From contig NC_091283.1 in the NCBI RefSeq assembly GCF_032444005.1, positions 62,744,001 through 62,808,000 of the forward strand: a stretch of 64,000 nucleotides of DNA, given 5' to 3'. The notes under the pieces were generated by a model. It saw only the letters and a list, made by a program, of their open reading frames with translations, was not told the DNA's origin and ran no database searches. Of the stretch, positions 3,181 to 37,889 are shown one piece after another. A program made the translations under genes and the position numbers. Source of the stretch: Ranitomeya imitator (taxonomy: Eukaryota). Numbering within the stretch: the stretch's first letter is position 1; each line of letters begins with the position of its first letter.

Positions 3181-6100
3181 GCAGTTTTTAGAATGGTGTC
3201 AATTTTGGGCATTTTCTGTCATATAGACCCCTCAAAGTCACTTCAAGTGTGAGGTGGTCCGTAAAAAAATGGTTTTGCAAATTTTGTTGCAAAAATGAGA
3301 AATCGCTGGTCAACTTTTAACCCTTATAATGTCCTAACAAAAAAAAATTATGTTTCCAAAATTGTGCTGATGTAAAGCAGACATGTGGGAAATGTTGTTT
3401 ATTAACTATATTATGTGATATAACTCTCTAATTTAAGGGCATAAAAACTAAGAGTTTGAAAATTGCTAAATTTTCATAATTTCCGACAAATTTTTGTTTT
3501 TTTCACAAATAAATGCAAGTCATATCGAAGAAGTTTTACCACTATCATGAAGTACAATATGTCACGAGAAAACAGTGTCAGAATCACCAGGATCCGTTGA
3601 AGCGTTTCAGAGTTATGACCTCATAAAGTGACAGTGGTCAGAATTTGTGAAAATTGGCTCTGTCACTTAGGTGAAAACAGGCTTTGGGGTGAAGGGGTTA
3701 ACTGCTGATCTGAGCCAGATAGATAATAAACAAGAAGAAGATTGCTGAAGAGAGGATTACCCAGCTGACAAAAATAGATGGTAAAGCAAAACGCCTGAAG
3801 TGCACGTGGAAACCAAATGCAATGTTTACTCAATACTTAGCCAGCACTAGCTGCTTGAGTCAACCTTACAGGGTCTTGTATAGTGATGGGCAAACCCCTG
3901 GCTGTTCGGGTTTGGCGAGTTTGGCCGAACAGTTAAAAAAAAGTTTGGTAAAATTACTAGAACAGTACCCGAACCCTGACCTCATTCACATGACAGTACC
4001 GCAAACACTGCCTCTGATCGGCGGTAAGATCATTAAAGCCAGTCAGAGAGCCGCGGCTCCCATGCTGTCAAATGAAAAGGCCCCCCAAAGCGCTTAACTA
4101 GGGGGACACACGGGGGCACAGGCCCATTCATTACTGTCTATTTCTTGTGCTCATTCCCCTCCCCCGTTTGTTCCTTCATATTGGTCTATCCCACTCCCCC
4201 CTCTTCTCTATTAGGGCTATGATGTGAATGGTACTTACTGAGCTTTGAAGTCCTTTACAGGAAACCAGCAACTGCCAGGAGAAAATGCGAGAAGAAGGGG
4301 CCGTTGGTTTGAGCGGGAAAAAAACGCTGATTTGATTGGCTCAGGACTGAAAAGTGCGGGAAAATCAGAGGTATATTAGGCCCTTCTTCTGCGCAATCCA
4401 GTCAGTCCATGCGCAGCAAGAAAGAAAAGTGCCCCTCGCTCCCTCCCTAATAAATGTAAAAATTCCCGTCGCGATACTTGTTAGAAGGAATAGTCGCCCA
4501 GCTAATGCTGGGTGGACTTGGTTCTTTTTAAAGGTCATATAAATTATTTGATTATTATTTATTTATTTATGTATGAATTCTTAATGGATTTAAGCATTTG
4601 ATTTTAATTGGTTATTAAAGTAGTTGTTATTGGTAACCCTTAATAAATATTGTGGCCTATTTTATGCAATGAATTTGTCTGTGTCTTTTATTTTAGTTTT
4701 TTAAGTTATATATTGGTTCTATAACGAATTGGACCTTGTGCCTCCGTGACATCGTGAGCCCGCAGCTGTGACTGGAGGTAAAAAGTTTACCTATGGTCAC
4801 AGGCGTTGGCTGATGAGACAGCGCAGTTCAGGGGCCTGGTTGGGAGCGCAGCCTCAGTGATCTGTGGTAACCTTGGTGACATCACCACTAGTCACTGATG
4901 CTGCACTCGCAGCAGCTTATCCTTCTGTGGTTTTTAGCCTGAACGGTCATATCTTGGCACAATCCAGGTTGAAAATTGTTTATCCCAGATATGGATTGTG
5001 ACGTGGGACAGTACATTGGACTGGTGAGGAATGTAGTTGTTTTTCATTTTTATTTTTTTTACAGGAGACCATGGCTTCAATCAAATGGGTGTTAGGTGAG
5101 TATTATTATTGTTTATTATTTTCTGTTTTTTTACAAGAGACTAGTGATTCAATGGAATGGGCGTAAGATGAGTATAAATGTGTTTGTTATTTTTAAATAA
5201 AAAAGTAAAAGTGTGTTTTTTAATTTCAAATACAGGACTTTATTTTGGTTGGGTGTTTATACACAATATAACTATAGGCGTCTACACGCCTCTCCATTAC
5301 TAAGTCATGGAATTGATGTCACTAGACAATACAAAGGTGACATTAACCCCACAAATATGAACCTCACTTGCCACAGCCACAGGACAAATGGGAAGAGACT
5401 TGCAAAGCACCTGAATTAATGCATCTAATAGATACGCCTTTTCTGGGGCAGCGTGGCCTGCTATTTTTAGGCTGGGGTGCCAATATCCATGGCCCTTTAC
5501 CAGGCTGACAATTCCAGCCCCCAGCTCTTTGCTTTAGCTTGGCTGTTTGTCAAAAATGGTAGGGACCCCATGCCATTTTTTTTTTATTATTTAGTTAAAT
5601 AATTTTTTTTAAAAAGAGGACCCACTCTATTATTGATAACCAGCCTTGCTAAAACTGACAGCTAAGAGTTACAGCCTGCAGATGTCAGTTTTGCCATGCT
5701 GGTTCTCAAAAATACAGGGAAACCCATGTCATTTTTTTTGTATTAATTATTTATTTATAGCACAAGTGCCGGAATACTCCCATCAGCCGCCACCTGCTCT
5801 CGCTGTTATTAGTGGCAGCAGGCATAGTCTGATAGGAGTAGGAGACCCATCAGTAGATGCCTGTGACCGTAAATAAATTTTTTACCTGTGGTCTTACTCT
5901 GTCATCTGACAGCAAGAGAGCTGCAGCACTCTAATCGACGGTAACAATCTTACCACCTATCAGAGCTGACGGTGTTTCTTGCGCTGTCATGCAGATAACA
6001 ACAAAGGGTAGTGGCCGTGCGAGAAGGAAGCAGGGCCCAGTACTGATGCTTGGACAAGTAACAGCTATTCATTTTGCTAGAGTCACCCAAAAATGATCAC

Positions 6101-10426: not shown

Positions 10427-13374
10427 CTAGTGTATATACCCTGTAACATTATACTTTTCCAGAAAGGTATCCAGTCCCCTCTTAAATTTAAGTAATGAAT
10501 CACTCATTACAACATCATACGGCAGAGAGTTCCATAGTCTCACTGCTCTTACAGTAAAGAATCCGCGTCTGTTATTATGCTTAAACCTTTTTTCCTCCAA
10601 ATGCAGAGGATGCCCCCTTGTCCCTGTTTCAGGTCTATGATTAAAAAGATCATCAGAAAGGTCTTTGTACTGTCCCCTCATATATTTATACATTAAAATA
10701 AGATCACCCCTTAGTCTTCGTTTTTCCAAACTAAATAGCCCCAAGTGTAATAACCTATCTTGGTATTGCAGACCCTCCAGTCCTCTAATAACCTTGGTCG
10801 CTCTTCTCTGCACCCGCTCCAGTTCAGCTATGTCTTTCTTAAACACCGGAGACCAGAACTGTGCACAGTATTCTAAGTGTGGTCAAACTACTGACTTGTA
10901 TAGAGGTAAAATTATATTCTCCTCATGAGCATCTATGCCTCTTTTAATGCATCCCATTATTTTATTTGCCTTTGTAGCAGCTGCCTGACACTGGCCCCTG
11001 AATATGAGTTTGTCATCCATCCATACACCCAGGTTTTTTTCATTGACGGTTTTGCCCAGAGTTTTAGAATTAAGCACATAATTATACATCTTATTACTTC
11101 TACCCAAGTGCATGACCTTACATTTATCCCCATTAAAGCTCATTTGCCATTTATCAGCCCAAGCTTCTAGTTTACATAAATCATCCTGTAATATAAAATT
11201 GTCCTCCTCTGTATTGATTACCCTGCAGAGTTTAGTGTCATCTGCAAATATTGAAATTCTACTCTGAATGCCCCCTACAAGGTCATTAATAAATATGTTA
11301 AAAAGAAGAGGGCCCAATACTGACCCCTGTGGTACCCCACTGCTAACCGCTACCCAGTCCGAGTGTGCTCCATTAATAACCACCCTTTGTTTCCTATCCC
11401 TGAGCCAGCTCTCAACCCACTTGCACATATTTTCCCCTATCCCCATTATTCTCATTTTATATATCAACCTTTTGTGTGGCACCGTATCAAAAGCTTTTGA
11501 AAAGTCCATATACACTACATCCACTGGGTTCCCTTGGTCCAATCCGGAACTTACCTCTTCATAGAAACTGATCAAATTAGTCTGACATGAACGGTCCCTA
11601 GTAAACCCGTGCTGATACTGGGTCATGAGGTTATTCCTCTTCAGATACTCCAGTATAGCGTCCCTTAGAATGCCCTCCAGGATTTTACCCACAGTAGAGG
11701 TTAAGCTTACTGGCCTATAATTTCCGAGTTCAGTTTTTGTTCCCTTTTTGAATATTGGCACCACATTTGCTATACGCCAGTCCTGTGGCACAGACCCTGT
11801 TATTATGGAGTCTTTAAAGATTAAAAATAATGGTCTATCAATGACTGTACTTAATTCCTGCAGTACTCGAGGGTGTATCCCATCCGGGCCCGGAGATTTG
11901 TCAATTTTAGTGATTTTTAGCCGCCGCCGCACTTCCTGCTGGGTTAAGCAGGTGACATTTAATTGGGAATTTTTATCACTAGACATTTTGTCTGCCATGG
12001 GATTTTCTTGTGTAAATACTGATGAAAAAAAGTCATTTAGCATATTGGCTTTTTCCTCATCCTCATCCACCATCTCACCCAGACTATTTTTAAGGGGGCC
12101 AACACTATCATTTTTTAGTTTCTTACTATTTATGTAGTTAAAGAATATTTTAGGATTATTTTACTCTCTCTGGCAATGAGTCTCTCTGTCTCAATCTTTG
12201 CTGCCTTGATTTGCTTTTTACAGAATTTATTTAATTTTCTGTATTTATTTAATGCCTCCTCACTACCTACTTCCTTTAATTCTCTAAATGCTTTCTTTTT
12301 GTCACTTATTGCGCCCCTTACAGCTCTATTTAGCCATATTGGTTTCCTCCTATTTCTAGTATGTTTATTCCCATACGGTATATACTGTGCACAGGTCCTA
12401 TCCAGGATGCTAATAAACGTCTCCCATTTTCTTTGTGTATTTTTGTGTCTCAGGATATCGTCCCAGTTAATTGCACCAAGATCCTCTCTCATCCGTTGGA
12501 AATTTGCCCTCCTGAAGTTTAGTGTCCTTGTAACCCCTCTACTACACATCTTTTTAAAGGATACATGAAAACTTAATATTTTGTGATCGCTATTTCCCAA
12601 GTGACCCCCAACCCTTATATTTGATATGCGGTCTGGCCTGTTGGTTAATATTAGGTCTAGCAGTGCCCCCTTTCTTGTTGGGTCCTGAACCAGTTGTGAA
12701 AGGTAATTGTCTCTCATAGTTGTCAAAAACCGATTACCTTTGCTGGAACTGCAGGTTTCTGTTCCCCAATCTATTTCAGGGTAGTTGAAGTCCCCCATAA
12801 TAATGACTTCTCCTTGAGTCGCAGCTTCATCTATTTGCTTTACGAGGATATTTTCCATTGCTTCCATTATTTTTGGAGATTTATAACAAACCCCTATCAG
12901 TAATTTATTATTTTTTCCCCCTCCCCTTATCTCCACCCACAGGGATTCTACATTTTCATTAAATTCACCTATATTATCGCACAGGATGGGTTTTAAGGAC
13001 GATTTTACATTTAGACACACCCCTCCCCCTCGCTTATCTGTATGGTCATTTCTGAACAGGCTATAGCCCTGCAAGTTAACAGCCCTGTCATGGCTCTCAT
13101 CCAGCCACGTTTCAGATATCCCCACCATGTCATAATTATGCTCCAACAACATTAGTTCTAATTCGTCCACTTTGTTGGTGAGGCTTCTGGCATTAGTATG
13201 CATGAACTTTATGTTCCTCTCTGTACTTCTATTTCTTAAATTATTAACTGTTCTGACCCCACCCCCCATGCCACCGCCACCCCCAACTTCCTTATTTGTG
13301 CCTAGGTCTCTGTCTGCACTATCTTCCCCTCCTATAAAATGAATACCCTCCCCCCCAATTCCTAGTTTAAACAA
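10427..13374 (-). pseudogene. CR1-A ORF2 (APE endonuclease + reverse transcriptase), disrupted
   Basis: NARSLTNK, ISETW, GDFN, SDH (APE); YRPVSLTS, DFSKAFD, GVPQGSVLGP, FADD (RT). One 1-bp frameshift near 12160 and one in-frame TGA at 10883-10885 (SVV*PHLEYC, likely CGA>TGA). Confidence 0.92.
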
Positions 13375-14033
13375 TCCTCCAACCTTCTAGCCATTCTCTC
13401 CCCCAGCACAGCTGCACCCTCCCCATTGAGGTGCAGCCCGTCCCTAGCGTAGAGCCTGTAGCCAACTGAGAAGTCGGCCCAGTTCTGCAGGAACCCAAAC
13501 CCCTCTTTCCTACACCAATTCTTGAGCCACTTATTAACCTCTCTAATCTCCCGTTGCCTCTCTGGCGTGGCACGTGGTACCGGCAGTATTTCGGAAAATA
13601 CCACGTTGGAGGTCCTTGCTTTCAGCTTGCAGCCTAATTCCCTGAAATCATCTTTAAGGACCTTCCACCTACCTCTAACTTTGTCATTAGTGCCAATGTG
13701 CACCATGACCGCTGGGTCCTCACCAGCCCCTCCCAATAATCTGTCCACCCGATCAGCGATGTGTCGGACTCGAGCGCCACGTAGGCAGCACACCATTCGA
13801 TGATCCCTGTCTTTGTGACAGATTGCCCTATCTGTTCCCCTAATAATTGAGTCGCCCACTACCAGCACCTGTCTGGCCTGCCCTGCTCTCCTATTTCCCT
13901 CCTTACTGGAGCAGTCACTCCTCTGGCTTTCAGAGGACATGCCTGGCTGCAGCAGTGCTACCCCTGTACTGGCACCCCCCTCATCTGCCAACTTAGCAAA
14001 CTTATTGGAGTGTGCCAGGTCAGGACTAGCCTC
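13362..14033 (-). CDS. CR1-A ORF1, N-truncated (SGNH/GDSL esterase-like domain)
   Basis: VLVVGDSIIRG, VHIGTND, DGLHLN motifs; ends DCLN*. The N-terminal zinc finger is lost by 5' truncation. Confidence 0.85.
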   Translation of the reverse strand, partial: EASPDLAHSNKFAKLADEGGASTGVALLQPGMSSESQRSDCSSKEGNRRAGQARQVLVVGDSIIRGTDRAICHKDRDHRMVCCLRGARVRHIADRVDRLLGGAGEDPAVMVHIGTNDKVRGRWKVLKDDFRELGCKLKARTSNVVFSEILPVPRATPERQREIREVNKWLKNWCRKEGFGFLQNWADFSVGYRLYARDGLHLNGEGAAVLGERMARRLEDCLN

Positions 14034-17000
14034 GCTAGGTCTGTTACCATTAGTACTATACAGCCTAAATTTCTCTTATCTGTAACCCTGATTTGCTCAT
14101 TGTCGTCCTTTTCTGTCATGGCATTTGTGGATTCAGGCGCTGCCCTGAACTTAATGGACTTAGAATTCGCCAGGCGCTGTGGTTTTTCCTTGCAGCCTTT
14201 GCAGAGCCCTATTCCTTTGAGGGGTATTGATGCTACACCCTTGGCCAAGGATAAACCTCAGTACTGGACGCAGATGACTATGTACATGGCCCCAGCACAT
14301 CAGGAAGATTGCCGTTTTCTGGTGTTGCATAACCTGCATGATGTTGTTGTACTGGGTTTTCCATGGTTACAGGAACATAGTCCGGTGCTGGATTGGAAAA
14401 CTATGACTGTGACTAGTTGGGGTTGTCAAGGGGTACATAGTGACGTTCCTTTGATGTCAATTTCCTCCTCTTCTTCCTCTTCTGAAATTCCAGAGTTTTT
14501 GTCTGATTTTCAGGATGTATTAGATGAGCCCAAGTCCAGTTCCCTTCCACCGCACAGGGACTGTGATTGTGCTATTAACTTGATTCCTGGTTGCAAGTTC
14601 CCTAAGCGCCGACTTTTCAATCTGTCTGTGCCAGAGCATGCCGCCATGCGGAGTTATGTTAAGGAGTCTTTGGAGAAGGGGCATACTCGGCCCTCTTCGT
14701 CACCATTGGGAGCGTGTTTCTTTTTTGTTGCTAAGAATGATGGCTCCTTGAGACCCTGTATTGATTATCGTCTTCTTAATAAGATCACGGTTAAATTCCA
14801 ATACCCCTTGCCTTTGCTTACTGATTTGTTTGCTCAGATTAAGGGGGCTAGTTGGTTTACTAAGATTGACCTCCGAGGGGCATATAATCTTGTTCGTATT
14901 AAACAGGGTGACGATTGGAAAACTGCATTTAATACGCCCGAAGGCCATTTTGAATACCTTGTGATGCCATTTGGGCTCTCTAATGCTCCATCTGTGTTCC
15001 AGTCTTTTATGCATGATATTTTCCACAATTATCTTGATAAATTCATGGTCGTATATTTGGATGATATTTTGATTTTTTCCGATGATTGGGAGTCTCATTT
15101 GAAGCAGGTCAGGATGGTGTTCCAGATCCTTTGTGATAATGCTTTGTTTGTGAAGGGGTCTAAGTGCCTATTCGGAGTTCAGAAGGTCTCTTTTTTGGGT
15201 TTTATTTTTTCTCCCTCATCTATAGAAATGGATCCTGTTAAGGTCCAAGCTATTCATGACTGGATTCAACCCACATCTGTGAAGGGCCTTCAAAAATTTT
15301 TGGGCTTTGCTAATTTCTATCGCCGTTTCATTGCCAACTTTTCCAGTGTGGTTAAGCCCCTTACTGATTTGACGAAGAAAGGCGCTGATGTGACGAATTG
15401 GTCCTTTGCTGCTGTTGAGGCCTTTCAGGAGCTTAAACGCCGATTTACTTCTGCCCCTGTGTTGCGTCAGCCGGATGTTTCTCTTCCTTTTCAGGTTGAG
15501 GTTGACGCTTCTGAGATTGGGGCAGGGGCCGTTTTGTCTCAGAGGGAGTCTGATGGTTCTTTGATGAAATCGTGTGCCTTTTTTTCCAGAAAATTTTCGC
15601 CTGCGGAACACAATTATGATATCGGCAATCGGGAGTTGTTGGCTATGAAGTGGGCGTTTGAGGAGTGGCGACATTGGCTTGAGGGAGCCAAGCACCGCAT
15701 TGTGGTCTTGACCGATCATAAGAATCTGATTTACCTTGAGTCGGCCAAGCGGCTGAACCCTAGACAGGCTCGGTGGTCCCTGTTTTTCTCCCGTTTTGAT
15801 TTTGTGGTCTCATATCTTCCAGGATCTAAGAATGTTAAAGCGGATGCCCTCTCTAGGAGTTTTTTGCCGGATTCTCCTGGAGTCCTTGAGCCGGTTGGCA
15901 TTCTTATGGAAGGGGTGATTCTGTCTGCCATCTCCCCTGATTTGCGGCGGGCGCTTCGGGAGTTTCAGGCTGATAAACCTGACCGCTGTCCTGTGGGGAA
16001 GCTGTTTGTTCCTGATAGATGGACAAGTAAGGTAATTTCTGAGGTCCATTGTTCTGTGTTGGCCGGTCATCCTGGGATTTTTGGTACCAGAGATTTGGTT
16101 GCTAGGTCCTTTTGGTGGCCTTCCTTTTCGCGGGATGTGCGTTATTTTGTGCTGTCCTGTGGGACTTGTGCCCGGGCTAAGCCTTGCTGTTCCCGCGCTA
16201 GTGGGTTGCTTTTGCCTTTGCCCGTCCCGGAGAGGCCTTGGACGCATATTTCCATGGATTTTATTTCGGATCTTCCTGTGTCCCAGAGGATGTCTGTTAT
16301 CTGGGTGGTTTGTGACCGGTTCTCTAAAATGGTCCATTTGGTGCTTTTGCCTAAATTGCCTTCCTCCTCTGATTTGGTTCCATTGTTTTTTCAATATGTG
16401 GATCGTTTTCATGGCATTTCGGAGAATGTTGTGTCTGACAGAGGTTCCCAGTTTGTTTCCAGGTTTTGGCGGGCCTTTTGTGCTAGGATGGGTATTGATT
16501 TGTCTTTTTCTTCGGCGTTCCATCCTCAGACAAATGGTCAAACTGAGCGAACTAATCAAACCTTGGAGACCTATTTGAGATGCTTTGTGTCTGCTGATCA
16601 GGATGATTGGGTGACTTTCTTGCCGTTGGCCGAGTTTGCCCTTAATAATCGGGCCAGTTCGGCTACTTTGGTTTCGCCTTTCTTTTGTAATTTTGGTTTC
16701 CATCCTCGTTTTTCTTCAGGGCAGGTTGAGCCTTCTGATTGTCCTGGTGTAGATTCTGTGATGGACAGGTTACAGCAGATTTGGACTCATGTGGTGGACA
16801 ATTTGACGTTGTCCCAGGAAAAGGCTCAGCGTTTTGCTAACCGCCGTCGGTGTGTTGGTCCTCGGCTTCGTGTGGGGGATTTGGTCTGGTTGTCCTCTCG
16901 TCATGTTCCTATGAAGGTTTCTTCCCCTAAGTTCAAGCCTCAGTTTATTGGTCCTTATAAGATTTCTGAGATTATCAATCCTGTGTCTTTTTGTTTGGCC

Positions 17001-17447
17001 CTTCCAGCCTCTTTTGCCATCCACAATGTTTTCCATAGATCTTTGTTGCGGAGATATGAGGTGCCCGTTGTTCCATCTGTTGATCCTCCTGCCCCGGTGT
17101 TGGTTGAGGGGGAGTTGGAATATGTGGTTGAGAAAAATTTGGATTCTCGTTTTTCGAGGCGGAAGCTTCAGTATCTTGTCAAGTGGAAGGGTTATGGCCA
17201 GGAGGATAATTCTTGGGTTGTTGCCTCCGATGTTCATGCCGCCGATTTGGTTCGTGCTTTTCATTTGGCTTGTCCTGATCGGCCTGGGGGCTCTGGTGAG
17301 GGTTCGGTGACCCCTCCTCAAGGGGGGGGTACTGTTGTGAATTCCGCTCTTGGGCTCCCTCCGGTGGTTGTAAGTGGCACTTTTGTGAGTTCTGCTCTTG
17401 GGCTCCCTCCTGTGGTTTTGAGTGGTATGGCTGCTTCTTGGATTTAG
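14034..17447 (+). CDS. Chromovirus A pol: protease, RT, RNase H, integrase, chromodomain
   Basis: Open frame with FVDSGA, YLDD, EVDASE, HPG...CGTC, SMDF..SDRG..ERTN, GPY and YVVEK...YLVKWKGYG. The first 8 codons of the track ORF (from 14010) belong to CR1-A. Confidence 0.93.
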   Translation, partial: ARSVTISTIQPKFLLSVTLICSLSSFSVMAFVDSGAALNLMDLEFARRCGFSLQPLQSPIPLRGIDATPLAKDKPQYWTQMTMYMAPAHQEDCRFLVLHNLHDVVVLGFPWLQEHSPVLDWKTMTVTSWGCQGVHSDVPLMSISSSSSSSEIPEFLSDFQDVLDEPKSSSLPPHRDCDCAINLIPGCKFPKRRLFNLSVPEHAAMRSYVKESLEKGHTRPSSSPLGACFFFVAKNDGSLRPCIDYRLLNKITVKFQYPLPLLTDLFAQIKGASWFTKIDLRGAYNLVRIKQGDDWKTAFNTPEGHFEYLVMPFGLSNAPSVFQSFMHDIFHNYLDKFMVVYLDDILIFSDDWESHLKQVRMVFQILCDNALFVKGSKCLFGVQKVSFLGFIFSPSSIEMDPVKVQAIHDWIQPTSVKGLQKFLGFANFYRRFIANFSSVVKPLTDLTKKGADVTNWSFAAVEAFQELKRRFTSAPVLRQPDVSLPFQVEVDASEIGAGAVLSQRESDGSLMKSCAFFSRKFSPAEHNYDIGNRELLAMKWAFEEWRHWLEGAKHRIVVLTDHKNLIYLESAKRLNPRQARWSLFFSRFDFVVSYLPGSKNVKADALSRSFLPDSPGVLEPVGILMEGVILSAISPDLRRALREFQADKPDRCPVGKLFVPDRWTSKVISEVHCSVLAGHPGIFGTRDLVARSFWWPSFSRDVRYFVLSCGTCARAKPCCSRASGLLLPLPVPERPWTHISMDFISDLPVSQRMSVIWVVCDRFSKMVHLVLLPKLPSSSDLVPLFFQYVDRFHGISENVVSDRGSQFVSRFWRAFCARMGIDLSFSSAFHPQTNGQTERTNQTLETYLRCFVSADQDDWVTFLPLAEFALNNRASSATLVSPFFCNFGFHPRFSSGQVEPSDCPGVDSVMDRLQQIWTHVVDNLTLSQEKAQRFANRRRCVGPRLRVGDLVWLSSRHVPMKVSSPKFKPQFIGPYKISEIINPVSFCLALPASFAIHNVFHRSLLRRYEVPVVPSVDPPAPVLVEGELEYVVEKNLDSRFSRRKLQYLVKWKGYGQEDNSWVVASDVHAADLVRAFHLACPDRPGGSGEGSVTPPQGGGTVVNSALGLPPVVVSGTFVSSALGLPPVVLSGMAASWI

Positions 17448-32685: not shown

Positions 32686-33428
32686 GTGAGTCTTAATATT
32701 AAGTATCTTTTTGCTAAATTACCTTGTGCTTTGAAGATTACCTTCCCTCTTATTTTAGGTGGCAATCATCTCAGCAATGTCTGGTTTGTTTTTACAATCT
32801 GGATTTACTTCCCGGTTTAGATCTGCAACTAATTATTCATCTGTTGTAAGCATAACAAATTTATCTCTGGACTTGTTCACACTACAGGACTGCTCTATCA
32901 GAGCACATCGTTTCCATAAACACGTTTTTCTGTTCACCTTGGCTTTTAGTGACCACTTATCCACTTATTTGTTTGCTGATTAACCCTTTGCCTGCACTAG
33001 GAATAACAAACAGTTCCTGTGTGTGTCACTCCTGCCTCATCTCTTCTGATGTTCACTGCTCTGCTTGTCTGTGGCCATCCAGTATACCCCGCTGTCATGG
33101 TTTTTGCATTTCCACATGCCAACCGGCAAGCCCTGCCACTGTGATGTCACCTTTGGTCCATATTGTCCTGACCTGTGGCTTGGAGAATCCACCTCTCCAG
33201 GTAAGCCGCCTTGTTGACTGTTAGGTCGGAGTCACACCACAGCGAGATACGGCCGAGTCTCGTAGGTTAAAAACAAGCTCTGGCGCCGGCATTCCGGAGC
33301 GGAGCGTGCAGCTCCATGTATTGCTGTGCGGCCGCACGGTCCGCTCTGGAGTGCCGGTGCCAGAGCTTGGCTGAGTAGATTACACAAGAAGGAAAACACA
33401 CAGCAAGTCAGCAGGATCTAGGAGCAAC

Positions 33429-34382
33429 ATGGCAGATGTGACAACCTACATGGTGAGCTGCAGCATGTGCTACATGTTCACAGATCGACCAGAAGAAGAA
33501 TTAAATTTCACCTGTCAGAAGTGTAGACTAGTGGCCCTTTTAGAAGAAAAGGTGCGGGGTCTGGAAGAAAGAATAGCAACTTTGAAACTCATCAAAGAGA
33601 ATGAAGACTTTCTAGACAGAACAGAAGCATCTCTACTGGTCACAGAAGGTGCAAAAAGTGTCAGAGAACCTCCAAAAGCAGATGAGTGGAAGCATGTGAC
33701 CAAAAGAAGCAAGAAGACCATGGAGAAATCACCAACCACACAACTGAAGAACCGATATCAAATCTTTGTAGAGGATGAAGATGGCACACCTAAGAATGAA
33801 GCAATACCAGCAAGCAAAAAAGAAAAGGGCACACAGCAACAAGTGACAGCAAAAAGTACAGCCAAGAAGCAACGAAGAGTGGTGGTGGTGGGAGACTCAC
33901 TACTGAGAGGCACCGAAGCAGCCATCTGCAGACCGGACATAACTGCAAGAGAAGTATGCTGCCTTCCAGGTGCGATGATCAAGGATGTGACCGATAGGAT
34001 ACCAAAGCTCTTCAGCTCCAAGGACGTCCACCCATTTCTTCTGATACATGTTGGCACCAATGACACGGCAAGGAAGGACCTACCGACAATCTGCAAGGAC
34101 TTTGAAGAGTTGGGGAAGAAAGTAAAGGAACTGGATGCACAGGTAGTTTTTTCTTCTATCCTTCCAGTAGACGGGCATGGCACCAGGAGATGGAACAGGA
34201 TCCTTGATGCAAACAACTGGCTAAGACGATGGTGCAGACAACAAGGATTTGGATTCCTGGACCACGGTGTGAATTACTGGTATGATGGACTCCTCGCCAG
34301 AGACGGACTACACCTCAACAAACCTGGGAAACACACATTCGCCAGAAGACTCGCTACACTCATCAGGAGGGCGTTAAACTAG
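33429..34382 (+). CDS. CR1-B ORF1p: N-terminal CxxC...CxxC zinc finger, coiled coil, SGNH esterase-like domain
   Basis: CSMC...CQKC; LEEKVRGLEERIATL; VVVVGDSLLRG, HVGTND, DGLHLN; ends RRALN*. Confidence 0.92.
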   Translation: MADVTTYMVSCSMCYMFTDRPEEELNFTCQKCRLVALLEEKVRGLEERIATLKLIKENEDFLDRTEASLLVTEGAKSVREPPKADEWKHVTKRSKKTMEKSPTTQLKNRYQIFVEDEDGTPKNEAIPASKKEKGTQQQVTAKSTAKKQRRVVVVGDSLLRGTEAAICRPDITAREVCCLPGAMIKDVTDRIPKLFSSKDVHPFLLIHVGTNDTARKDLPTICKDFEELGKKVKELDAQVVFSSILPVDGHGTRRWNRILDANNWLRRWCRQQGFGFLDHGVNYWYDGLLARDGLHLNKPGKHTFARRLATLIRRALN

Positions 34383-37300
34383 AAGAAGAGGGGACGGGAA
34401 GAAAAACATTAGACTCGAACAAAGACGACCCAGGAAAACATACTCAGAAGGGAGGTAAGAACATTTCTAAAACAATCCACAGTGAGGAGATTGGAACAAA
34501 ACAAAATCCTCTAAACTGCATGCTCGCAAACGCCAGAAGCCTGACAAACAAGATGGAAGAACTAGAAGCAGAAATATCTACAGGTAACTTTGACATAGTG
34601 GGAATAACCGAGACATGGTTAGATGAAAGCTATGACTGGGCAGTTAACTTACAGGGTTACAGTCTGTTTAGAAAGGATCGTAAAAATCGGAGAGGAGGAG
34701 GGGTTTGTCTCTATGTAAAGTCTTGTCTAAAGTCCACTTTAAGGGAGGATATTAGCGAAGGGAATGAGGATGTCGAGTCCATATGGGTTGAAATTCATGG
34801 AGGGAAAAATGGTAACAAAATTCTCATTGGGGTCTGTTACAAACCCCCAAATATAACAGAAAGCATGGAAAGTCTACTTCTAAAGCAGATAGATGAAGCT
34901 GCAACCCATAATGAGGTCCTGGTTATGGGGGACTTTAACTACCCGGATATTAACTGGGAAACAGAAACCTGTGAAACCCATAAAGGCAACAGGTTTCTGC
35001 TAATAACCAAGAAAAATTATCTTTCACAATTGGTGCAGAATCCAACCAGAGGAGCAGCACTTTTAGACCTAATACTATCTAATAGACCTGACAGAATAAC
35101 AAATCTGCAGGTGGTTGGGCATTTAGGAAATAGCGACCACAATATTGTGCAGTTTCACCTGTCTTTCACTAGGGGGACTTGTCAGGGAGTCACAAAAACA
35201 CTGAACTTTAGGAAGGCAAAGTTTGAACAGCTTAGAGATGCCCTTAATCTGGTAGACTGGGACAATATCCTCAGAAATGAGAATACAGATAATAAATGGG
35301 AAATGTTTAAGAACATCCTAAATAGGCAGTGTAAGCGGTTTATACCTTGTGGGAATAAAAGGACTAGAAATAGGAAAAACCCAATGTGGCTAAACAAAGA
35401 AGTAAGACAGGCAATTAACAGTAAAAAGAAAGCATTTGCACTACTAAAGCAGGATGGCACCATTGAAGCTCTAAAAAACTATAGGGAGAAAAATACTTTA
35501 TCTAAAAAACTAATTAAAGCTGCCAAAAAGGAAACAGAGAAGCACATTGCTAAGGAGAGTAAAACTAATCCCAAACTGTTCTTCAACTATATCAATAGTA
35601 AAAGAATAAAAACTGAAAATGTAGGCCCCTTAAAAAATAGTGAGGAAAGAATGGTTGTAGATGACGAGGAAAAAGCTAACATATTAAACACCTTCTTCTC
35701 CACGGTATTCACGGTGGAAAATGAAATGCTAGGTGAAATCCCAAGAAACAATGAAAACCCTATATTAAGGGTCACCAATCTAACCCAAGAAGAGGTGCGA
35801 AACCGGCTAAATAAGATTAAAATAGATAAATCTCCGGGTCCGGATGGCATACACCCACGAGTACTAAGAGAACTAAGTAATGTAATAGATAAACCATTAT
35901 TTCTTATTTTTAGGGACTCTATAGAGACAGGGTCTGTTCCGCAGGATTGGCGCATAGCAAATGTGGTGCCAATATTCAAAAAGGGCTCTAAAAGTGAACC
36001 TGGAAATTATAGGCCAGTAAGTCTAACCTCTATTGTTGGTAAAATATTTGAAGGGTTTCTGAGGGATGTTATTCTGGATTATCTCAATGAGAATAACTGT
36101 TTAACTCCATATCAGCATGGGTTTATGAGAAATCGCTCCTGTCAAACCAATCTAATCAGTTTTTATGAAGAGGTAAGCTATAGGCTGGACCACGGTGAGT
36201 CATTGGACGTGGTATATCTCGATTTTTCCAAAGCGTTTGATACCGTGCCGCACAAGAGGTTGGTACACAAAATGAGAATGCTTGGTCTGGGGGAAAATGT
36301 GTGTAAATGGGTTAGTAACTGGCTTAGTGATAGAAAGCAGAGGGTGGTTATAAATGGTATAGTCTCTAACTGGGTCGCTGTGACCAGTGGGGTACCGCAG
36401 GGGTCAGTATTGGGACCTGTTCTCTTCAACATATTCATTAATGATCTGGTAGAAGGTTTACACAGTAAAATAACGATATTTGCAGATGATACAAAACTAT
36501 GTAAAGCAGTTAATACAAGAGAAGATAGTATTCTGCTACAGATGGATCTGGATAAGTTGGAAACTTGGGCTGAAAGGTGGCAGATGAGGTTTAACAATGA
36601 TAAATGTAAGGTTATACACATGGGAAGAGGGAATCAATATCACCATTACACACTGAACGGGAAACCACTGGGTAAATCTGACAGGGAGAAGGACTTGGGG
36701 ATCCTAGTTAATGATAAACTTACCTGGAGCAGCCAGTGCCAGGCAGCAGCTGCCAAGGCAAACAGGATCATGGGGTGCATTAAAAGAGGTCTGGATACAC
36801 ATGATGAGAGCATTATACTGCCTCTGTACAAATCCCTAGTTAGACCGCACATGGAGTACTGTGTCCAGTTTTGGGCACCGGTGCTCAGGAAGGATATAAT
36901 GGAACTAGAGAGAGTACAAAGGAGGGCAACAAAATTAATAAAGGGGATGGGAGAACTACAATACCCAGATAGATTAGCGAAATTAGGATTATTTAGTCTA
37001 GAAAAAAGACGACTGAGGGGCGATCTAATAACCATGTATAAGTATATAAGGGGACAATACAAATATCTCGCTGAGGATCTGTTTATACCAAGGAAGGTGA
37101 CGGGCACAAGGGGGCATTCTTTGCGTCTGGAGGAGAGAAGGTTTTTCCACCAACATAGAAGAGGATTCTTTACTGTTAGGGCAGTGAGAATCTGGAATTG
37201 CTTGCCTGAGGAGGTGGTGATGGCGAACTCAGTCGAGGGGTTCAAGAGAGGCCTGGATGTCTTCCTGGAGCAGAACAATATTGTATCATACAATTATTAG
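34376..37300 (+). CDS. CR1-B ORF2p (APE endonuclease + RT). The frame is open upstream across the ORF1 stop (shown from 34376); first ATG at 34520
   Basis: 926 aa from the ATG with no stops: NARSLTNK, ITETW, GDFN, SDH, YRPVSLTS, DFSKAFD, QGSVLGP, FADD. Manual translation of 34370-34519 is stop-free. Confidence 0.95.
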   Translation, partial: KLEEEGTGRKTLDSNKDDPGKHTQKGGKNISKTIHSEEIGTKQNPLNCMLANARSLTNKMEELEAEISTGNFDIVGITETWLDESYDWAVNLQGYSLFRKDRKNRRGGGVCLYVKSCLKSTLREDISEGNEDVESIWVEIHGGKNGNKILIGVCYKPPNITESMESLLLKQIDEAATHNEVLVMGDFNYPDINWETETCETHKGNRFLLITKKNYLSQLVQNPTRGAALLDLILSNRPDRITNLQVVGHLGNSDHNIVQFHLSFTRGTCQGVTKTLNFRKAKFEQLRDALNLVDWDNILRNENTDNKWEMFKNILNRQCKRFIPCGNKRTRNRKNPMWLNKEVRQAINSKKKAFALLKQDGTIEALKNYREKNTLSKKLIKAAKKETEKHIAKESKTNPKLFFNYINSKRIKTENVGPLKNSEERMVVDDEEKANILNTFFSTVFTVENEMLGEIPRNNENPILRVTNLTQEEVRNRLNKIKIDKSPGPDGIHPRVLRELSNVIDKPLFLIFRDSIETGSVPQDWRIANVVPIFKKGSKSEPGNYRPVSLTSIVGKIFEGFLRDVILDYLNENNCLTPYQHGFMRNRSCQTNLISFYEEVSYRLDHGESLDVVYLDFSKAFDTVPHKRLVHKMRMLGLGENVCKWVSNWLSDRKQRVVINGIVSNWVAVTSGVPQGSVLGPVLFNIFINDLVEGLHSKITIFADDTKLCKAVNTREDSILLQMDLDKLETWAERWQMRFNNDKCKVIHMGRGNQYHHYTLNGKPLGKSDREKDLGILVNDKLTWSSQCQAAAAKANRIMGCIKRGLDTHDESIILPLYKSLVRPHMEYCVQFWAPVLRKDIMELERVQRRATKLIKGMGELQYPDRLAKLGLFSLEKRRLRGDLITMYKYIRGQYKYLAEDLFIPRKVTGTRGHSLRLEERRFFHQHRRGFFTVRAVRIWNCLPEEVVMANSVEGFKRGLDVFLEQNNIVSYNY

Positions 37301-37889
37301 GTTCTGTAGAAGGACGTAGATCTGGGTATTTATTATGATGGAATATAGGCTGAACTGGATGGACAAATGTCTTTTTTCGGCCTTACTTACTAACTAACTA
37401 ACTAACTAACTAACCTGCGAGACTCGGCCGTATCTCGCTGTGTGTGATCCCGGCCTTACTGTTTTCATCCATCTTACACTTAAATGTCGCAAACAGGAAA
37501 AAACTCCACATAGCATATCCTGAAGAAAGCATCCACTGGCCCCATGGTGATCTAGATGGCTACCCTCTAGATATGTGCTAATCTTTAGAATTCAGATTTT
37601 CCAGCTACAAAAACAAAAATTCAATTTGCAGCTAATTAATTTTCCTCAAATCTCAAGTACTGCGAAGTCTCCAATTGCCCTGAAAGCACATGTATAAGAC
37701 TTTGAGGTCTCCTAGGACTGTATTGAACATTTTTCAAACTATATAATACAAACACAGCCAAGTGACCTCAACATTAATGACTATGGGTAAATGGAAAGTA
37801 GCTGTTTTTCACTGCTATCTGTAATGTTTATTCAGTGTTTTATCACTTTCTCTCCTTATCTACATGGCAAATCTGTGAGCTGTGACTAA

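What the first reader, a model, noticed from the sequence alone, without database searches (positions are those of the whole stretch)
34370..34522. CR1-B independently shows the same ORF1/ORF2 junction (G_UUA_AAC-UAG, -1 frame open)
Seen: GCG TTA AAC TAG (heptamer 34373-34379). The -1 frame runs VKLEEEGTGRKTL... for 48 stop-free codons to the first ATG (34520), which sits within the first endonuclease motif. The linker sequence is unlike CR1-A's, yet heptamer position and frame are kept; a stop-free run this long is only about 10% likely by chance per element. Established: G_UUA_AAC is the equine arteritis virus shift site. Inference: a conserved recoding mechanism in CR1 LINEs. I cannot check whether it has been reported. 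Initiation at the Met before NARS remains an alternative, as both families have one.
Basis: partly seen in the sequence, partly recalled or inferred. Interest (0 to 1): 0.75.

Follow-up and report, generated by a model that had tools for sequence, protein, structure and literature searches.

The report
Conserved frameshift signal joining CR1 genes
The two genes of this frog CR1 jumping element meet at a slippery seven-letter signal, kept letter for letter in CR1 elements from rays to birds, which most likely makes ribosomes slip back one base so that the enzyme gene is made as a fusion with the first gene.

Summary
CR1-B (about 33362-37412, + strand) is an intact CR1 LINE. ORF1, an SGNH esterase, ends GCG TTA AAC TAG. 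ORF2 (EN-RT) lies in the -1 frame and is open from 34286.

I fetched 19 ORF1/ORF2 junctions from two frog families, turtles, lizards, a snake, an alligator, bird-like host DNA, a ray and an eel (esterase identity 24-78%).
- All 19 end ORF1 with TTA AAC plus a stop, while 15 other invariant residues use 2-6 synonymous codons each.
- The base before TTA is T in 18 of 19, whatever the amino acid. CR1-B has G, giving the equine arteritis virus heptamer.
- In the 16 intact junctions, 914 linker codons hold 0 stops in the -1 frame against 53 and 62 in the other two frames.
- Five families have no ATG before the endonuclease, so AUG initiation cannot be the general mechanism.
- A G-run follows the stop in 19 of 19.

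No downstream RNA structure is predicted for CR1-B, so efficiency is unknown. No report of this signal turned up in the papers searched, but the key older CR1 papers were not held.

First readers noted the same junction elsewhere in this genome (s1-294761, s1-294981, s1-307490, s1-279779, s1-294905). None had been followed up.

The parts
33362..37412 (+). CR1-B element, full length with intact ORFs
   Evidence: ORFs. 5' limit: contigs of other copies diverge upstream of 33362 (table 7). 3' end: (CTAA)n tail at about 37388-37412.
33429..34382 (+). ORF1, 317 aa, SGNH/GDSL esterase type, ending ...RRALN plus TAG
   Evidence: Pfam Lipase_GDSL_2 E 3.4e-9. 94-99% identical to Ranitomeya imitator proteins.
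34373..34379 (+). Slippery heptamer G_UUA_AAC in the ORF1 phase
   Evidence: TTA and AAC are invariant at the nucleotide level in 19 of 19 junctions. The G at 34373 is shared by contigs of 4 runs.
34380..34382 (+). ORF1 stop codon TAG, directly 3' of the heptamer
   Evidence: A stop (TAG, TGA or TAA) is in this position in 19 of 19 representative junctions and 67 of 73 metagenome copies.
34390..34398 (+). G-run GGGGACGGG, starting 10 nt after the heptamer. In the -1 frame it encodes Gly-Thr-Gly.
   Evidence: GGGG lies within 22 nt after the stop in 19 of 19 junctions against 10% of control windows.
34286..34519 (+). Stretch of the -1 (ORF2) frame that is open upstream of the first ATG. It comprises the 97-nt overlap with ORF1 and the 46-codon linker.
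   Evidence: The linker has 0 stops in the -1 frame and 2 and 3 in the other frames.
34520..34522 (+). First ATG of the ORF2 frame, three codons before the catalytic Asn of the endonuclease (34529-34531). This is the alternative start.
   Evidence: The position is Leu or Val in amniote families.
34379..37300 (+). ORF2 frame as read after a -1 slip: 973 codons covering linker, AP endonuclease and reverse transcriptase. The predicted ORF1p-ORF2p fusion is 1290 aa.
   Evidence: Pfam Exo_endo_phos E 5e-16 and RVT_1 E 5e-34.
13365..13371 (-). CR1-A slippery heptamer U_UUA_AAC. It is followed by TAG (13364-13362) and the G-run GGGGGGGAGGG (13356-13346).
10436..14075 (-). CR1-A element, a second CR1 family. 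ORF1 is 5'-truncated. ORF2 is in the -1 frame and open from the heptamer to the EN motif (Met at 13203), but is broken by a frame change near 12160-12190.

Best explanation
The CR1-B junction is one copy of a deeply conserved programmed -1 ribosomal frameshift cassette found in CR1 LINEs with an esterase-type ORF1. The cassette consists of N_UUA_AAC (U_UUA_AAC in nearly all families, G_UUA_AAC in CR1-B), a 0-frame stop codon directly after it, and a G-run 6-11 nt further on.

Most ribosomes translating ORF1 terminate at UAG and release ORF1p. A minority slip back one base while the Leu and Asn tRNAs sit on UUA and AAC, re-pairing on GUU/UUU and AAA. They then read CUA and continue through a family-specific linker into the endonuclease and reverse transcriptase. 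In CR1-B this gives an ORF1p-ORF2p fusion of 1290 aa.

Shown here:
- the anatomy of the junction;
- nucleotide-level conservation of the heptamer;
- the constant -1 frame relationship;
- selection keeping the linker open;
- the absence of any AUG in several families.

Inferred:
- that slippage actually occurs;
- its efficiency;
- that the fusion sets the ORF2p:ORF1p ratio and ties ORF2p to the ORF1p-RNA particle in cis, as Gag-Pol does in retroviruses;
- what the G-run does. It may be the 5' arm of family-specific hairpins, a binding site for a factor, or only a by-product of a conserved Gly-x-Gly peptide.
For: 1. Phase and frame in the window.

2. C-termini. 95 of 120 ORF1 homologues from frogs, turtles, squamates, crocodilians and birds end in LN. 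So do 37 further representatives, including a sawshark, an electric ray and an eel.

3. DNA of 19 junctions.
- The last two codons are TTA and AAC in 19 of 19. The 15 other invariant residues use 2-6 synonymous codons (for example, Asn is 9 AAC and 9 AAT). TTA is only 7.9% of Leu codons in these ORF1s.
- The preceding codon varies (GCT, ACT, TGT, TAT, CAT, GGT, TCT, GAT), but its third base is T in 18 of 19 against a background of 0.225.

4. ORF2 is in the -1 frame in 47 of 55 metagenome copies, and in 39 of 44 with an intact heptamer. It is also -1 in turtle, lizard, snake and Varanus loci and in three loci of unknown species.

5. Linkers are 39-97 codons long and unrelated in sequence. They hold 0 stops in the -1 frame against 53 and 62 in the other two frames, over 914 codons.

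6. In bird-like families the -1 frame is closed by stops 3-6 nt before the heptamer. The only window for changing frame is therefore about 10-13 nt, and it contains the heptamer.

7. Five of 16 families have no ATG in the ORF2 frame between its upstream stop and the catalytic Asn of the endonuclease.

8. GUUAAAC and UUUAAAC are proven shift sites in arteriviruses and coronaviruses (PMC3835772).

9. Contigs of 4 runs show no inserted or deleted base at the heptamer.
Against: - There is no experimental evidence of a trans-frame protein from any CR1.
- For CR1-B and CR1-A no stable structure is predicted downstream (z +0.78 and +1.18). The same is true of a common bird-like family (z +0.28). A classical stimulator is therefore missing in these elements and efficiency may be low.
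- GUU is not a homopolymeric triplet, so P-site re-pairing in CR1-B is imperfect.
- CR1-B does have an ATG just before the endonuclease, so a second route to ORF2p cannot be excluded for this element.
- The 19 junctions share ancestry and are not statistically independent. The internal control of other invariant residues answers this only in part.
- The ray and eel copies have a decayed ORF2, so the frame relationship outside tetrapods rests on one partial case and on loci of unknown species.
Confidence: 0.75

Rival explanations
1. ORF2 of CR1-B is translated on its own from AUG 34520, by reinitiation after ORF1, leaky scanning or internal entry, as proposed for L1 and other LINEs. On this view the open -1 frame upstream is untranslated.
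For: An ATG sits three codons before the catalytic Asn in both frog families. L1 and SART1 ORF2 are known to depend on unconventional initiation after ORF1 translation (PMC2881922; PMC10275272). No stimulatory structure is predicted in CR1-B.
Against: The Met is not conserved. It is Leu or Val in amniote families, and 5 of 16 families have no ATG at all. This model does not explain the invariant TTA AAC codons, the T before them, the constant -1 offset, or the 0 of 914 stops in linkers. The 137-nt linker after a 317-codon ORF is a poor context for reinitiation, as argued in PMC3894237.
Confidence: 0.12
2. The conserved block is a termination-reinitiation signal. Ribosomes stop at the ORF1 stop, the 40S subunit is held (for example by the G-run pairing with rRNA or binding a factor), and translation restarts at a nearby non-AUG codon in the -1 frame.
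For: The stop codon is always directly next to the motif, and a G-rich element is always nearby. The SART1 LINE uses stop-start coupling with a downstream structure.
Against: There is no overlapping AUG of the UAAUG or AUGA type, and no conserved near-cognate start codon, at or after the stop in any family. Reinitiation does not require the -1 frame to be open across the heptamer, nor the T before UUA in phase with ORF1. The conserved letters match exactly a proven tandem-slippage heptamer.
Confidence: 0.07
3. The TTAAAC-stop-G-run block is conserved for a reason unrelated to translation, such as an internal promoter, an RNA packaging site or a DNA-level signal. The -1 arrangement would then be historical accident.
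For: TTTAAA followed by G-rich boxes resembles promoter elements. No experiment ties the motif to translation.
Against: A DNA or RNA signal would not need to be in codon phase, would not need ORF2 to be at -1, and would not keep linkers of unrelated sequence free of stops in exactly that frame. Families without an ATG would have no way to express a complete endonuclease.
Confidence: 0.04

Closest known systems
Nidovirus ORF1a/1b -1 frameshift signals (coronavirus U_UUA_AAC, equine arteritis virus G_UUA_AAC)
   Same: The heptamers are identical and lie in the same phase. The downstream ORF is in the -1 frame and encodes the polymerase.
   Different: Nidoviruses rely on an H-type pseudoknot 3-7 nt downstream and have no stop next to the heptamer. 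CR1 has a stop directly after the heptamer and a G-run. It has a predicted hairpin only in some families and none in this window's elements.
Gag-Pol -1 frameshifting of retroviruses and LTR retrotransposons, including PEG10
   Same: The logic is the same. An abundant first protein and a rare fusion carrying the reverse transcriptase are made from one RNA at a fixed ratio (Atkins et al. 2016, PMC5009743).
   Different: CR1 is a non-LTR element. Its first protein is an esterase with a coiled coil or zinc-finger-like N-terminus, not Gag, and there is no protease to separate the fusion.
Luteovirus and dianthovirus frameshift sites (for example barley yellow dwarf virus, G_GGU_UUU followed by UAG), cited from my own knowledge
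   Same: The 0-frame stop codon lies directly 3' of the slippery heptamer.
   Different: The heptamer is different. The plant viruses use a bulged hairpin plus a long-range interaction.
ORF2 translation in other LINEs: SART1 UAAUG stop-start coupling and human L1 unconventional reinitiation
   Same: These are bicistronic LINE RNAs in which ORF2 expression depends on ribosomes that translated ORF1.
   Different: Those elements make a separate ORF2p by reinitiation. CR1 has no stop-start overlap, often has no AUG, and has a canonical slippage heptamer, which points to a fusion protein.
PRRSV nsp2 -2/-1 frameshifting stimulated by a protein bound to a C-rich motif about 11 nt downstream, cited from my own knowledge
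   Same: A short, unstructured, homopolymer-rich motif lies at a similar distance downstream of the shift site.
   Different: The CR1 motif is G-rich, and no binding protein is known. This is an analogy only and is untested.

Membership tests
Programmed -1 ribosomal frameshift signal | Slippery heptamer X_XXY_YYZ (or a documented variant) in phase with the upstream ORF | tested here: met
   G_UUA_AAC lies at 34373-34379 in the ORF1 phase. It is identical to the EAV site. 18 of 19 related junctions have the canonical U_UUA_AAC.
Programmed -1 ribosomal frameshift signal | Downstream ORF in the -1 frame, open across the shift site | tested here: met
   The ORF2 frame is open from 34286. It is at -1 in 47 of 55 copies and has 0 stops in 914 linker codons.
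Programmed -1 ribosomal frameshift signal | Stimulatory RNA structure (pseudoknot or hairpin) 5-9 nt downstream | tested here: not met
   The fold of 34380-34480 gives -7.7 kcal/mol, z +0.78. CR1-A gives z +1.18. Hairpins that use the G-run as 5' arm exist in L091, L092 and L013 (z -3.6, -2.9, -3.3), but not universally. Pseudoknots were not searched for with a dedicated tool.
Programmed -1 ribosomal frameshift signal | Conservation of the site at the nucleotide level beyond what coding needs | tested here: met
   TTA is present in 19 of 19 and AAC in 19 of 19, while 15 control invariant residues show 2-6 synonymous codons. T precedes in 18 of 19.
Programmed -1 ribosomal frameshift signal | Demonstrated trans-frame protein product | not testable with these tools
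   This needs a reporter assay, mass spectrometry or ribosome profiling.
CR1 LINE with esterase-type ORF1 | ORF1 with an SGNH esterase domain; ORF2 with an AP endonuclease and a reverse transcriptase; a short repeat tail instead of poly(A) | tested here: met
   Pfam hits to Lipase_GDSL_2, Exo_endo_phos and RVT_1. (CTAA)n tail. The closest proteins are vertebrate CR1 ORF1s.
Termination-reinitiation (stop-start coupling, TURBS type) | Restart AUG overlapping or next to the stop (UAAUG, AUGA) | tested here: not met
   AAC TAG AAG in CR1-B. No family has an AUG at or next to the stop, and 5 of 16 have none before the endonuclease.

The most novel reading that the evidence does not exclude
The cassette of U_UUA_AAC, adjacent stop and G-run may be the ancestral and general way in which esterase-type CR1 LINEs, the dominant retrotransposons of most non-mammalian vertebrates, express their endonuclease and reverse transcriptase. 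ORF2p would then be made only as an ORF1p-ORF2p fusion by -1 frameshifting, retrovirus-style, and the signal would have been kept for more than 400 million years, from cartilaginous fish to birds. In many families it would work without a classical RNA structure, with the G-run acting as a new kind of stimulator that binds a factor or rRNA.
Probability: 0.35. Interest if true: 0.88.

Novelty: new member of a known kind. Interest (0 to 1): 0.78.

Why it matters
How LINE ORF2 is translated is an acknowledged open question. PMC3894237 says so in as many words. The two cases studied, L1 and SART1, use reinitiation.

A conserved, canonical -1 frameshift signal in CR1 would have several consequences.
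- A major LINE lineage would solve the problem the way retroviruses do, with a fixed ratio of structural protein to enzyme and a physical link that could explain cis-preference.
- It would correct ORF2 annotation. Many CR1 ORF2s have no start codon, so ORF finders and consensus libraries truncate or mis-start them.
- It gives a simple marker for potentially active copies.
- It offers a natural set of frameshift sites with and without a downstream structure for mechanistic work.
- It is directly testable with a short reporter construct.

Tried and rejected
- **Chance.** The 9-mer count in the window is at expectation, so I did not rely on it. The two non-CR1 copies lack every accompanying feature.
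- **A universal downstream hairpin.** Folds of 19 junctions show strong hairpins in only some families. I therefore built no covariance model.
- **G-quadruplex.** By eye, CR1-B has only two nearby G-tracts and most families lack four suitably spaced tracts. I rejected it as a general explanation without a formal computation.
- **Transcriptional slippage or editing.** Contigs of 4 runs show no indel at the heptamer. However, they are contigs and their RNA status is only guessed, so this is weak evidence.
- **Known RNA families.** Rfam gave nothing at the junction.
- **Distant esterase families ending QGN or SKN.** These could carry G_GGA_AAC or A_AAA_AAC. I could not obtain their DNA.
- **Literature.** Ten full-text searches and eleven papers read gave no report of CR1 frameshifting. 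Kapitonov & Jurka 2003 and Kojima et al. 2005 were not held. I did not request Haas et al. 1997 or Kajikawa et al. 1997, and neither surfaced in the searches. An earlier mention therefore cannot be excluded.
Full report
**What is in the window**

Positions about 33362-37412 (+) hold a full-length CR1-type LINE, here called CR1-B.
- ORF1 (33429-34382, 317 aa) has an SGNH/GDSL esterase domain.
- An ATG-initiated ORF2 (34520-37300, 926 aa) has an AP endonuclease and a reverse transcriptase.
- The closest proteins are from the poison frog Ranitomeya imitator, at 94-99% identity.
- ORF1 ends GCG TTA AAC TAG, which places G_TTA_AAC at 34373-34379 in the ORF1 phase.
- The ORF2 frame is -1 relative to ORF1. 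It is open from 34286, which is 78 codons before the ATG, and it overlaps ORF1 by 97 nt.

A second, decayed element of another CR1 family, CR1-A, lies on the minus strand at about 14075-10436.
- Its ORF1 is only about 36% identical to that of CR1-B.
- Its ORF1 ends TGT TTA AAC TAG (heptamer 13371-13365).
- Its ORF2 is again at -1 and open from the heptamer to the endonuclease, through a linker unrelated in sequence to that of CR1-B.

**Is it more than chance?**

For one element, no. A 49-codon open stretch has a chance of roughly 6-10%, and the 9-mer TTAAACTRR occurs four times in the window against 3.8 expected. The two occurrences outside CR1 have no ORF1 context, no G-run and a closed -1 frame. 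The question had to be settled by comparison.

**Comparative test at the protein level**

A word-indexed search with ORF1 returned 120 homologues from frogs, turtles, lizards, snakes, crocodilians and birds. Of these, 95 end in Leu-Asn, and the exceptions are mostly truncated or mis-spliced gene models. A profile search of 1.8 billion cluster representatives added 37 more proteins ending in LN. They include a sawshark, an electric ray and a deep-sea eel. The residue before Leu varies (A, T, C, Y, H, G, S, V, F, E, D).

**Comparative test at the DNA level**

A metagenome scan with an ORF1 profile used search patterns inside the esterase domain, so it was blind to the junction. It returned 80 loci, mostly bird-like host DNA from one JGI sample. 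Twelve contig look-ups added:
- Chelydra, Chrysemys, Zootoca, Varanus, Erythrolamprus and Alligator;
- Narcine (ray) and Synaphobranchus (eel);
- three runs of unknown species.

Among 73 metagenome loci that carry the ORF1 end:
- 58 have exactly TTTAAAC at the expected place, and 10 more differ by one base;
- 67 have a stop as the next codon;
- the endonuclease is in the -1 frame in 47 of 55, and in 39 of 44 with an intact heptamer, of which 31 are still open.

I chose 19 representative junctions whose esterase parts are 24-78% identical (median 42%). All 19 have TTA AAC followed by TAG, TGA or TAA.

**Internal control for shared ancestry**

In the same 19 sequences, the 15 other invariant or nearly invariant residues with degenerate codons use 2-6 synonymous codons each. 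Three invariant Leu columns use 4-6 codons, and an invariant Asn is 9 AAC and 9 AAT. Only the last two codons are fixed, with TTA in 19 of 19 and AAC in 19 of 19. TTA is only 7.9% of the Leu codons in these ORF1s.

The codon before TTA encodes eight different amino acids across the loci examined (GCT, ACT, TGT, TAT, CAT, GGT, TCT, GAT). Its third base is nevertheless T in 18 of 19 representative junctions, against a background of 0.225. The one exception is CR1-B (GCG), and that gives the heptamer of equine arteritis virus. Selection is therefore acting on the letters U_UUA_AAC and not on the protein.

**Evidence that the -1 frame is entered at the heptamer**

- Linkers between the heptamer and the endonuclease are 39-97 codons long and differ completely between families. 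In the 16 intact junctions they contain 0 stops in the -1 frame, against 53 and 62 in the other two frames, over 914 codons.
- In several bird-like families the -1 frame is closed by stop codons only 3-6 nt before the heptamer. The window between the last -1 stop and the ORF1 stop is then 10-13 nt and consists essentially of the heptamer.
- Five of 16 families have no ATG in the ORF2 frame before the catalytic Asn. These are a turtle, a snake, two bird-like families and one locus of unknown species.
- The Met that CR1-B and CR1-A carry there is Leu or Val in amniotes. The next Met lies after the catalytic Asn.
No family has a stop-start overlap of the SART1 or calicivirus kind.

**Downstream elements**

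A run of at least four G lies within 22 nt after the stop in 19 of 19 junctions, against 10% of control windows. It starts 4-17 nt after the heptamer, and 6-11 nt in most. In the -1 frame this stretch reads F/V-K-L-x3-G-x-G, which is GEGD in most amniotes.

In three families the G-run is the 5' arm of a stable hairpin (z -3.6, -2.9 and -3.3). In CR1-B, CR1-A and the commonest bird-like family, nothing folds better than shuffled sequence (z +0.78, +1.18 and +0.28). Rfam has no match at the junction.

I cannot tell which of three readings of the G-run is right. It may be a stimulator in its own right, it may be a stem arm that some families complete, or it may be a by-product of a conserved Gly-x-Gly peptide. 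This is the weakest part of the model. It means that the efficiency in CR1-B may be low, although a LINE needs very little ORF2p.

**Reads**

Contigs of four public runs from four studies cover the element and show no inserted or deleted base at the heptamer. The G at 34373 is shared. Whether these runs are RNA is only guessed, and contigs cannot show rare forms. This evidence is therefore weak against transcriptional slippage and says nothing firm about expression. The contigs diverge from the window upstream of 33362, which I take as the 5' end of the element.

**Mechanism proposed**

The proposal is tandem -1 slippage on UUA_AAC, with P-site tRNA-Leu moving to GUU or UUU and A-site tRNA-Asn moving to AAA. 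The next codon read is CUA. In CR1-B the product is ORF1p (317 aa) joined to 973 further residues, 1290 aa in all, consisting of esterase, linker, endonuclease and reverse transcriptase.
- Shown: the anatomy and the evolutionary constraint.
- Inferred: the slippage itself, its rate, and the idea that the fusion fixes the ORF2p:ORF1p ratio and couples ORF2p to its own RNA particle.

I put 0.75 on this, 0.12 on separate initiation at the ATG in the frog families, 0.07 on non-AUG termination-reinitiation, and 0.04 on an unrelated function of the motif.

**Comparison with what is known**

The heptamers are those of coronaviruses and arteriviruses (PMC3835772), and the logic is that of retroviral Gag-Pol (PMC5009743). 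The adjacent stop recalls luteovirus sites; that comparison rests on my own knowledge.

For LINEs, the reviews held describe ORF2 translation as unconventional initiation or reinitiation (L1, SART1), call it an open question, and do not mention frameshifting in CR1 (PMC2881922, PMC3894237 and PMC10275272). Several other papers also do not mention it:
- the 2016 recoding review;
- the 2014 ORF1 survey of the Jockey superfamily;
- the 2013 esterase structure paper;
- the 2014, 2024 and 2026 CR1 evolution papers.

The older primary CR1 papers were not available. Prior mention cannot be excluded, and I estimate that risk at roughly one in three. I file the finding as a new member of a known kind: a canonical -1 frameshift signal in a class of elements not known to use it.

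**Relation to other notes of this scan**

First readers flagged the same junction in at least four other places of this genome, and CR1-A in this window. None had been followed up. Those notes are not independent evidence. The cross-species data above are.

Noticed in passing
window 33238-33269 and 37411-37442; 33274-33369: CR1-B is bracketed by a 32-nt inverted repeat that is 97% complementary. Just upstream of ORF1 lies a 39-nt-arm hairpin, which gives a sub-threshold Rfam mir-960 match (31.7 bits against a gathering score of 100). The element may have landed inside a fold-back or palindromic repeat, or the hairpin may belong to its 5' UTR.
   Followed up: partly
window 14010-17447 (+): A 1145-aa ORF encodes a Ty3/gypsy-type pol with protease, RT, RNase H, integrase and chromodomain. 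It abuts the 5'-truncated ORF1 of CR1-A and probably interrupts it.
   Followed up: partly
proteins P0209, P0233 (end ...QGN) and P0238 (ends ...SKN): Distant esterase-ORF1 families do not end in LN. They end in GN or KN at the same alignment position. This would fit other canonical heptamers (G_GGA_AAC, A_AAA_AAC) before the stop. Their DNA could not be fetched.
   Followed up: partly
L091:1048-1087, L092:1467-1508, L013:4014-4050: In these CR1 families the G-run after the stop pairs with a C-run 20-30 nt downstream, giving a stable hairpin that starts 8-12 nt after the heptamer (z about -3). The families in this window lack it.
   Followed up: yes
window 12160-12190 (-): CR1-A ORF2 changes frame here, shown by a tblastn switch from frame -2 to frame -1. 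This copy is therefore dead even though its junction is intact.
   Followed up: no
L089 (Narcine bancroftii) around 3370-3560: The ray copy keeps T_TTA_AAC TAA and a G-run. Its -1 frame stays open for 62 codons, up to a motif resembling the start of the endonuclease (NLKALY), and then the copy is disrupted. This is a partial hint that the -1 arrangement predates bony vertebrates.
   Followed up: partly
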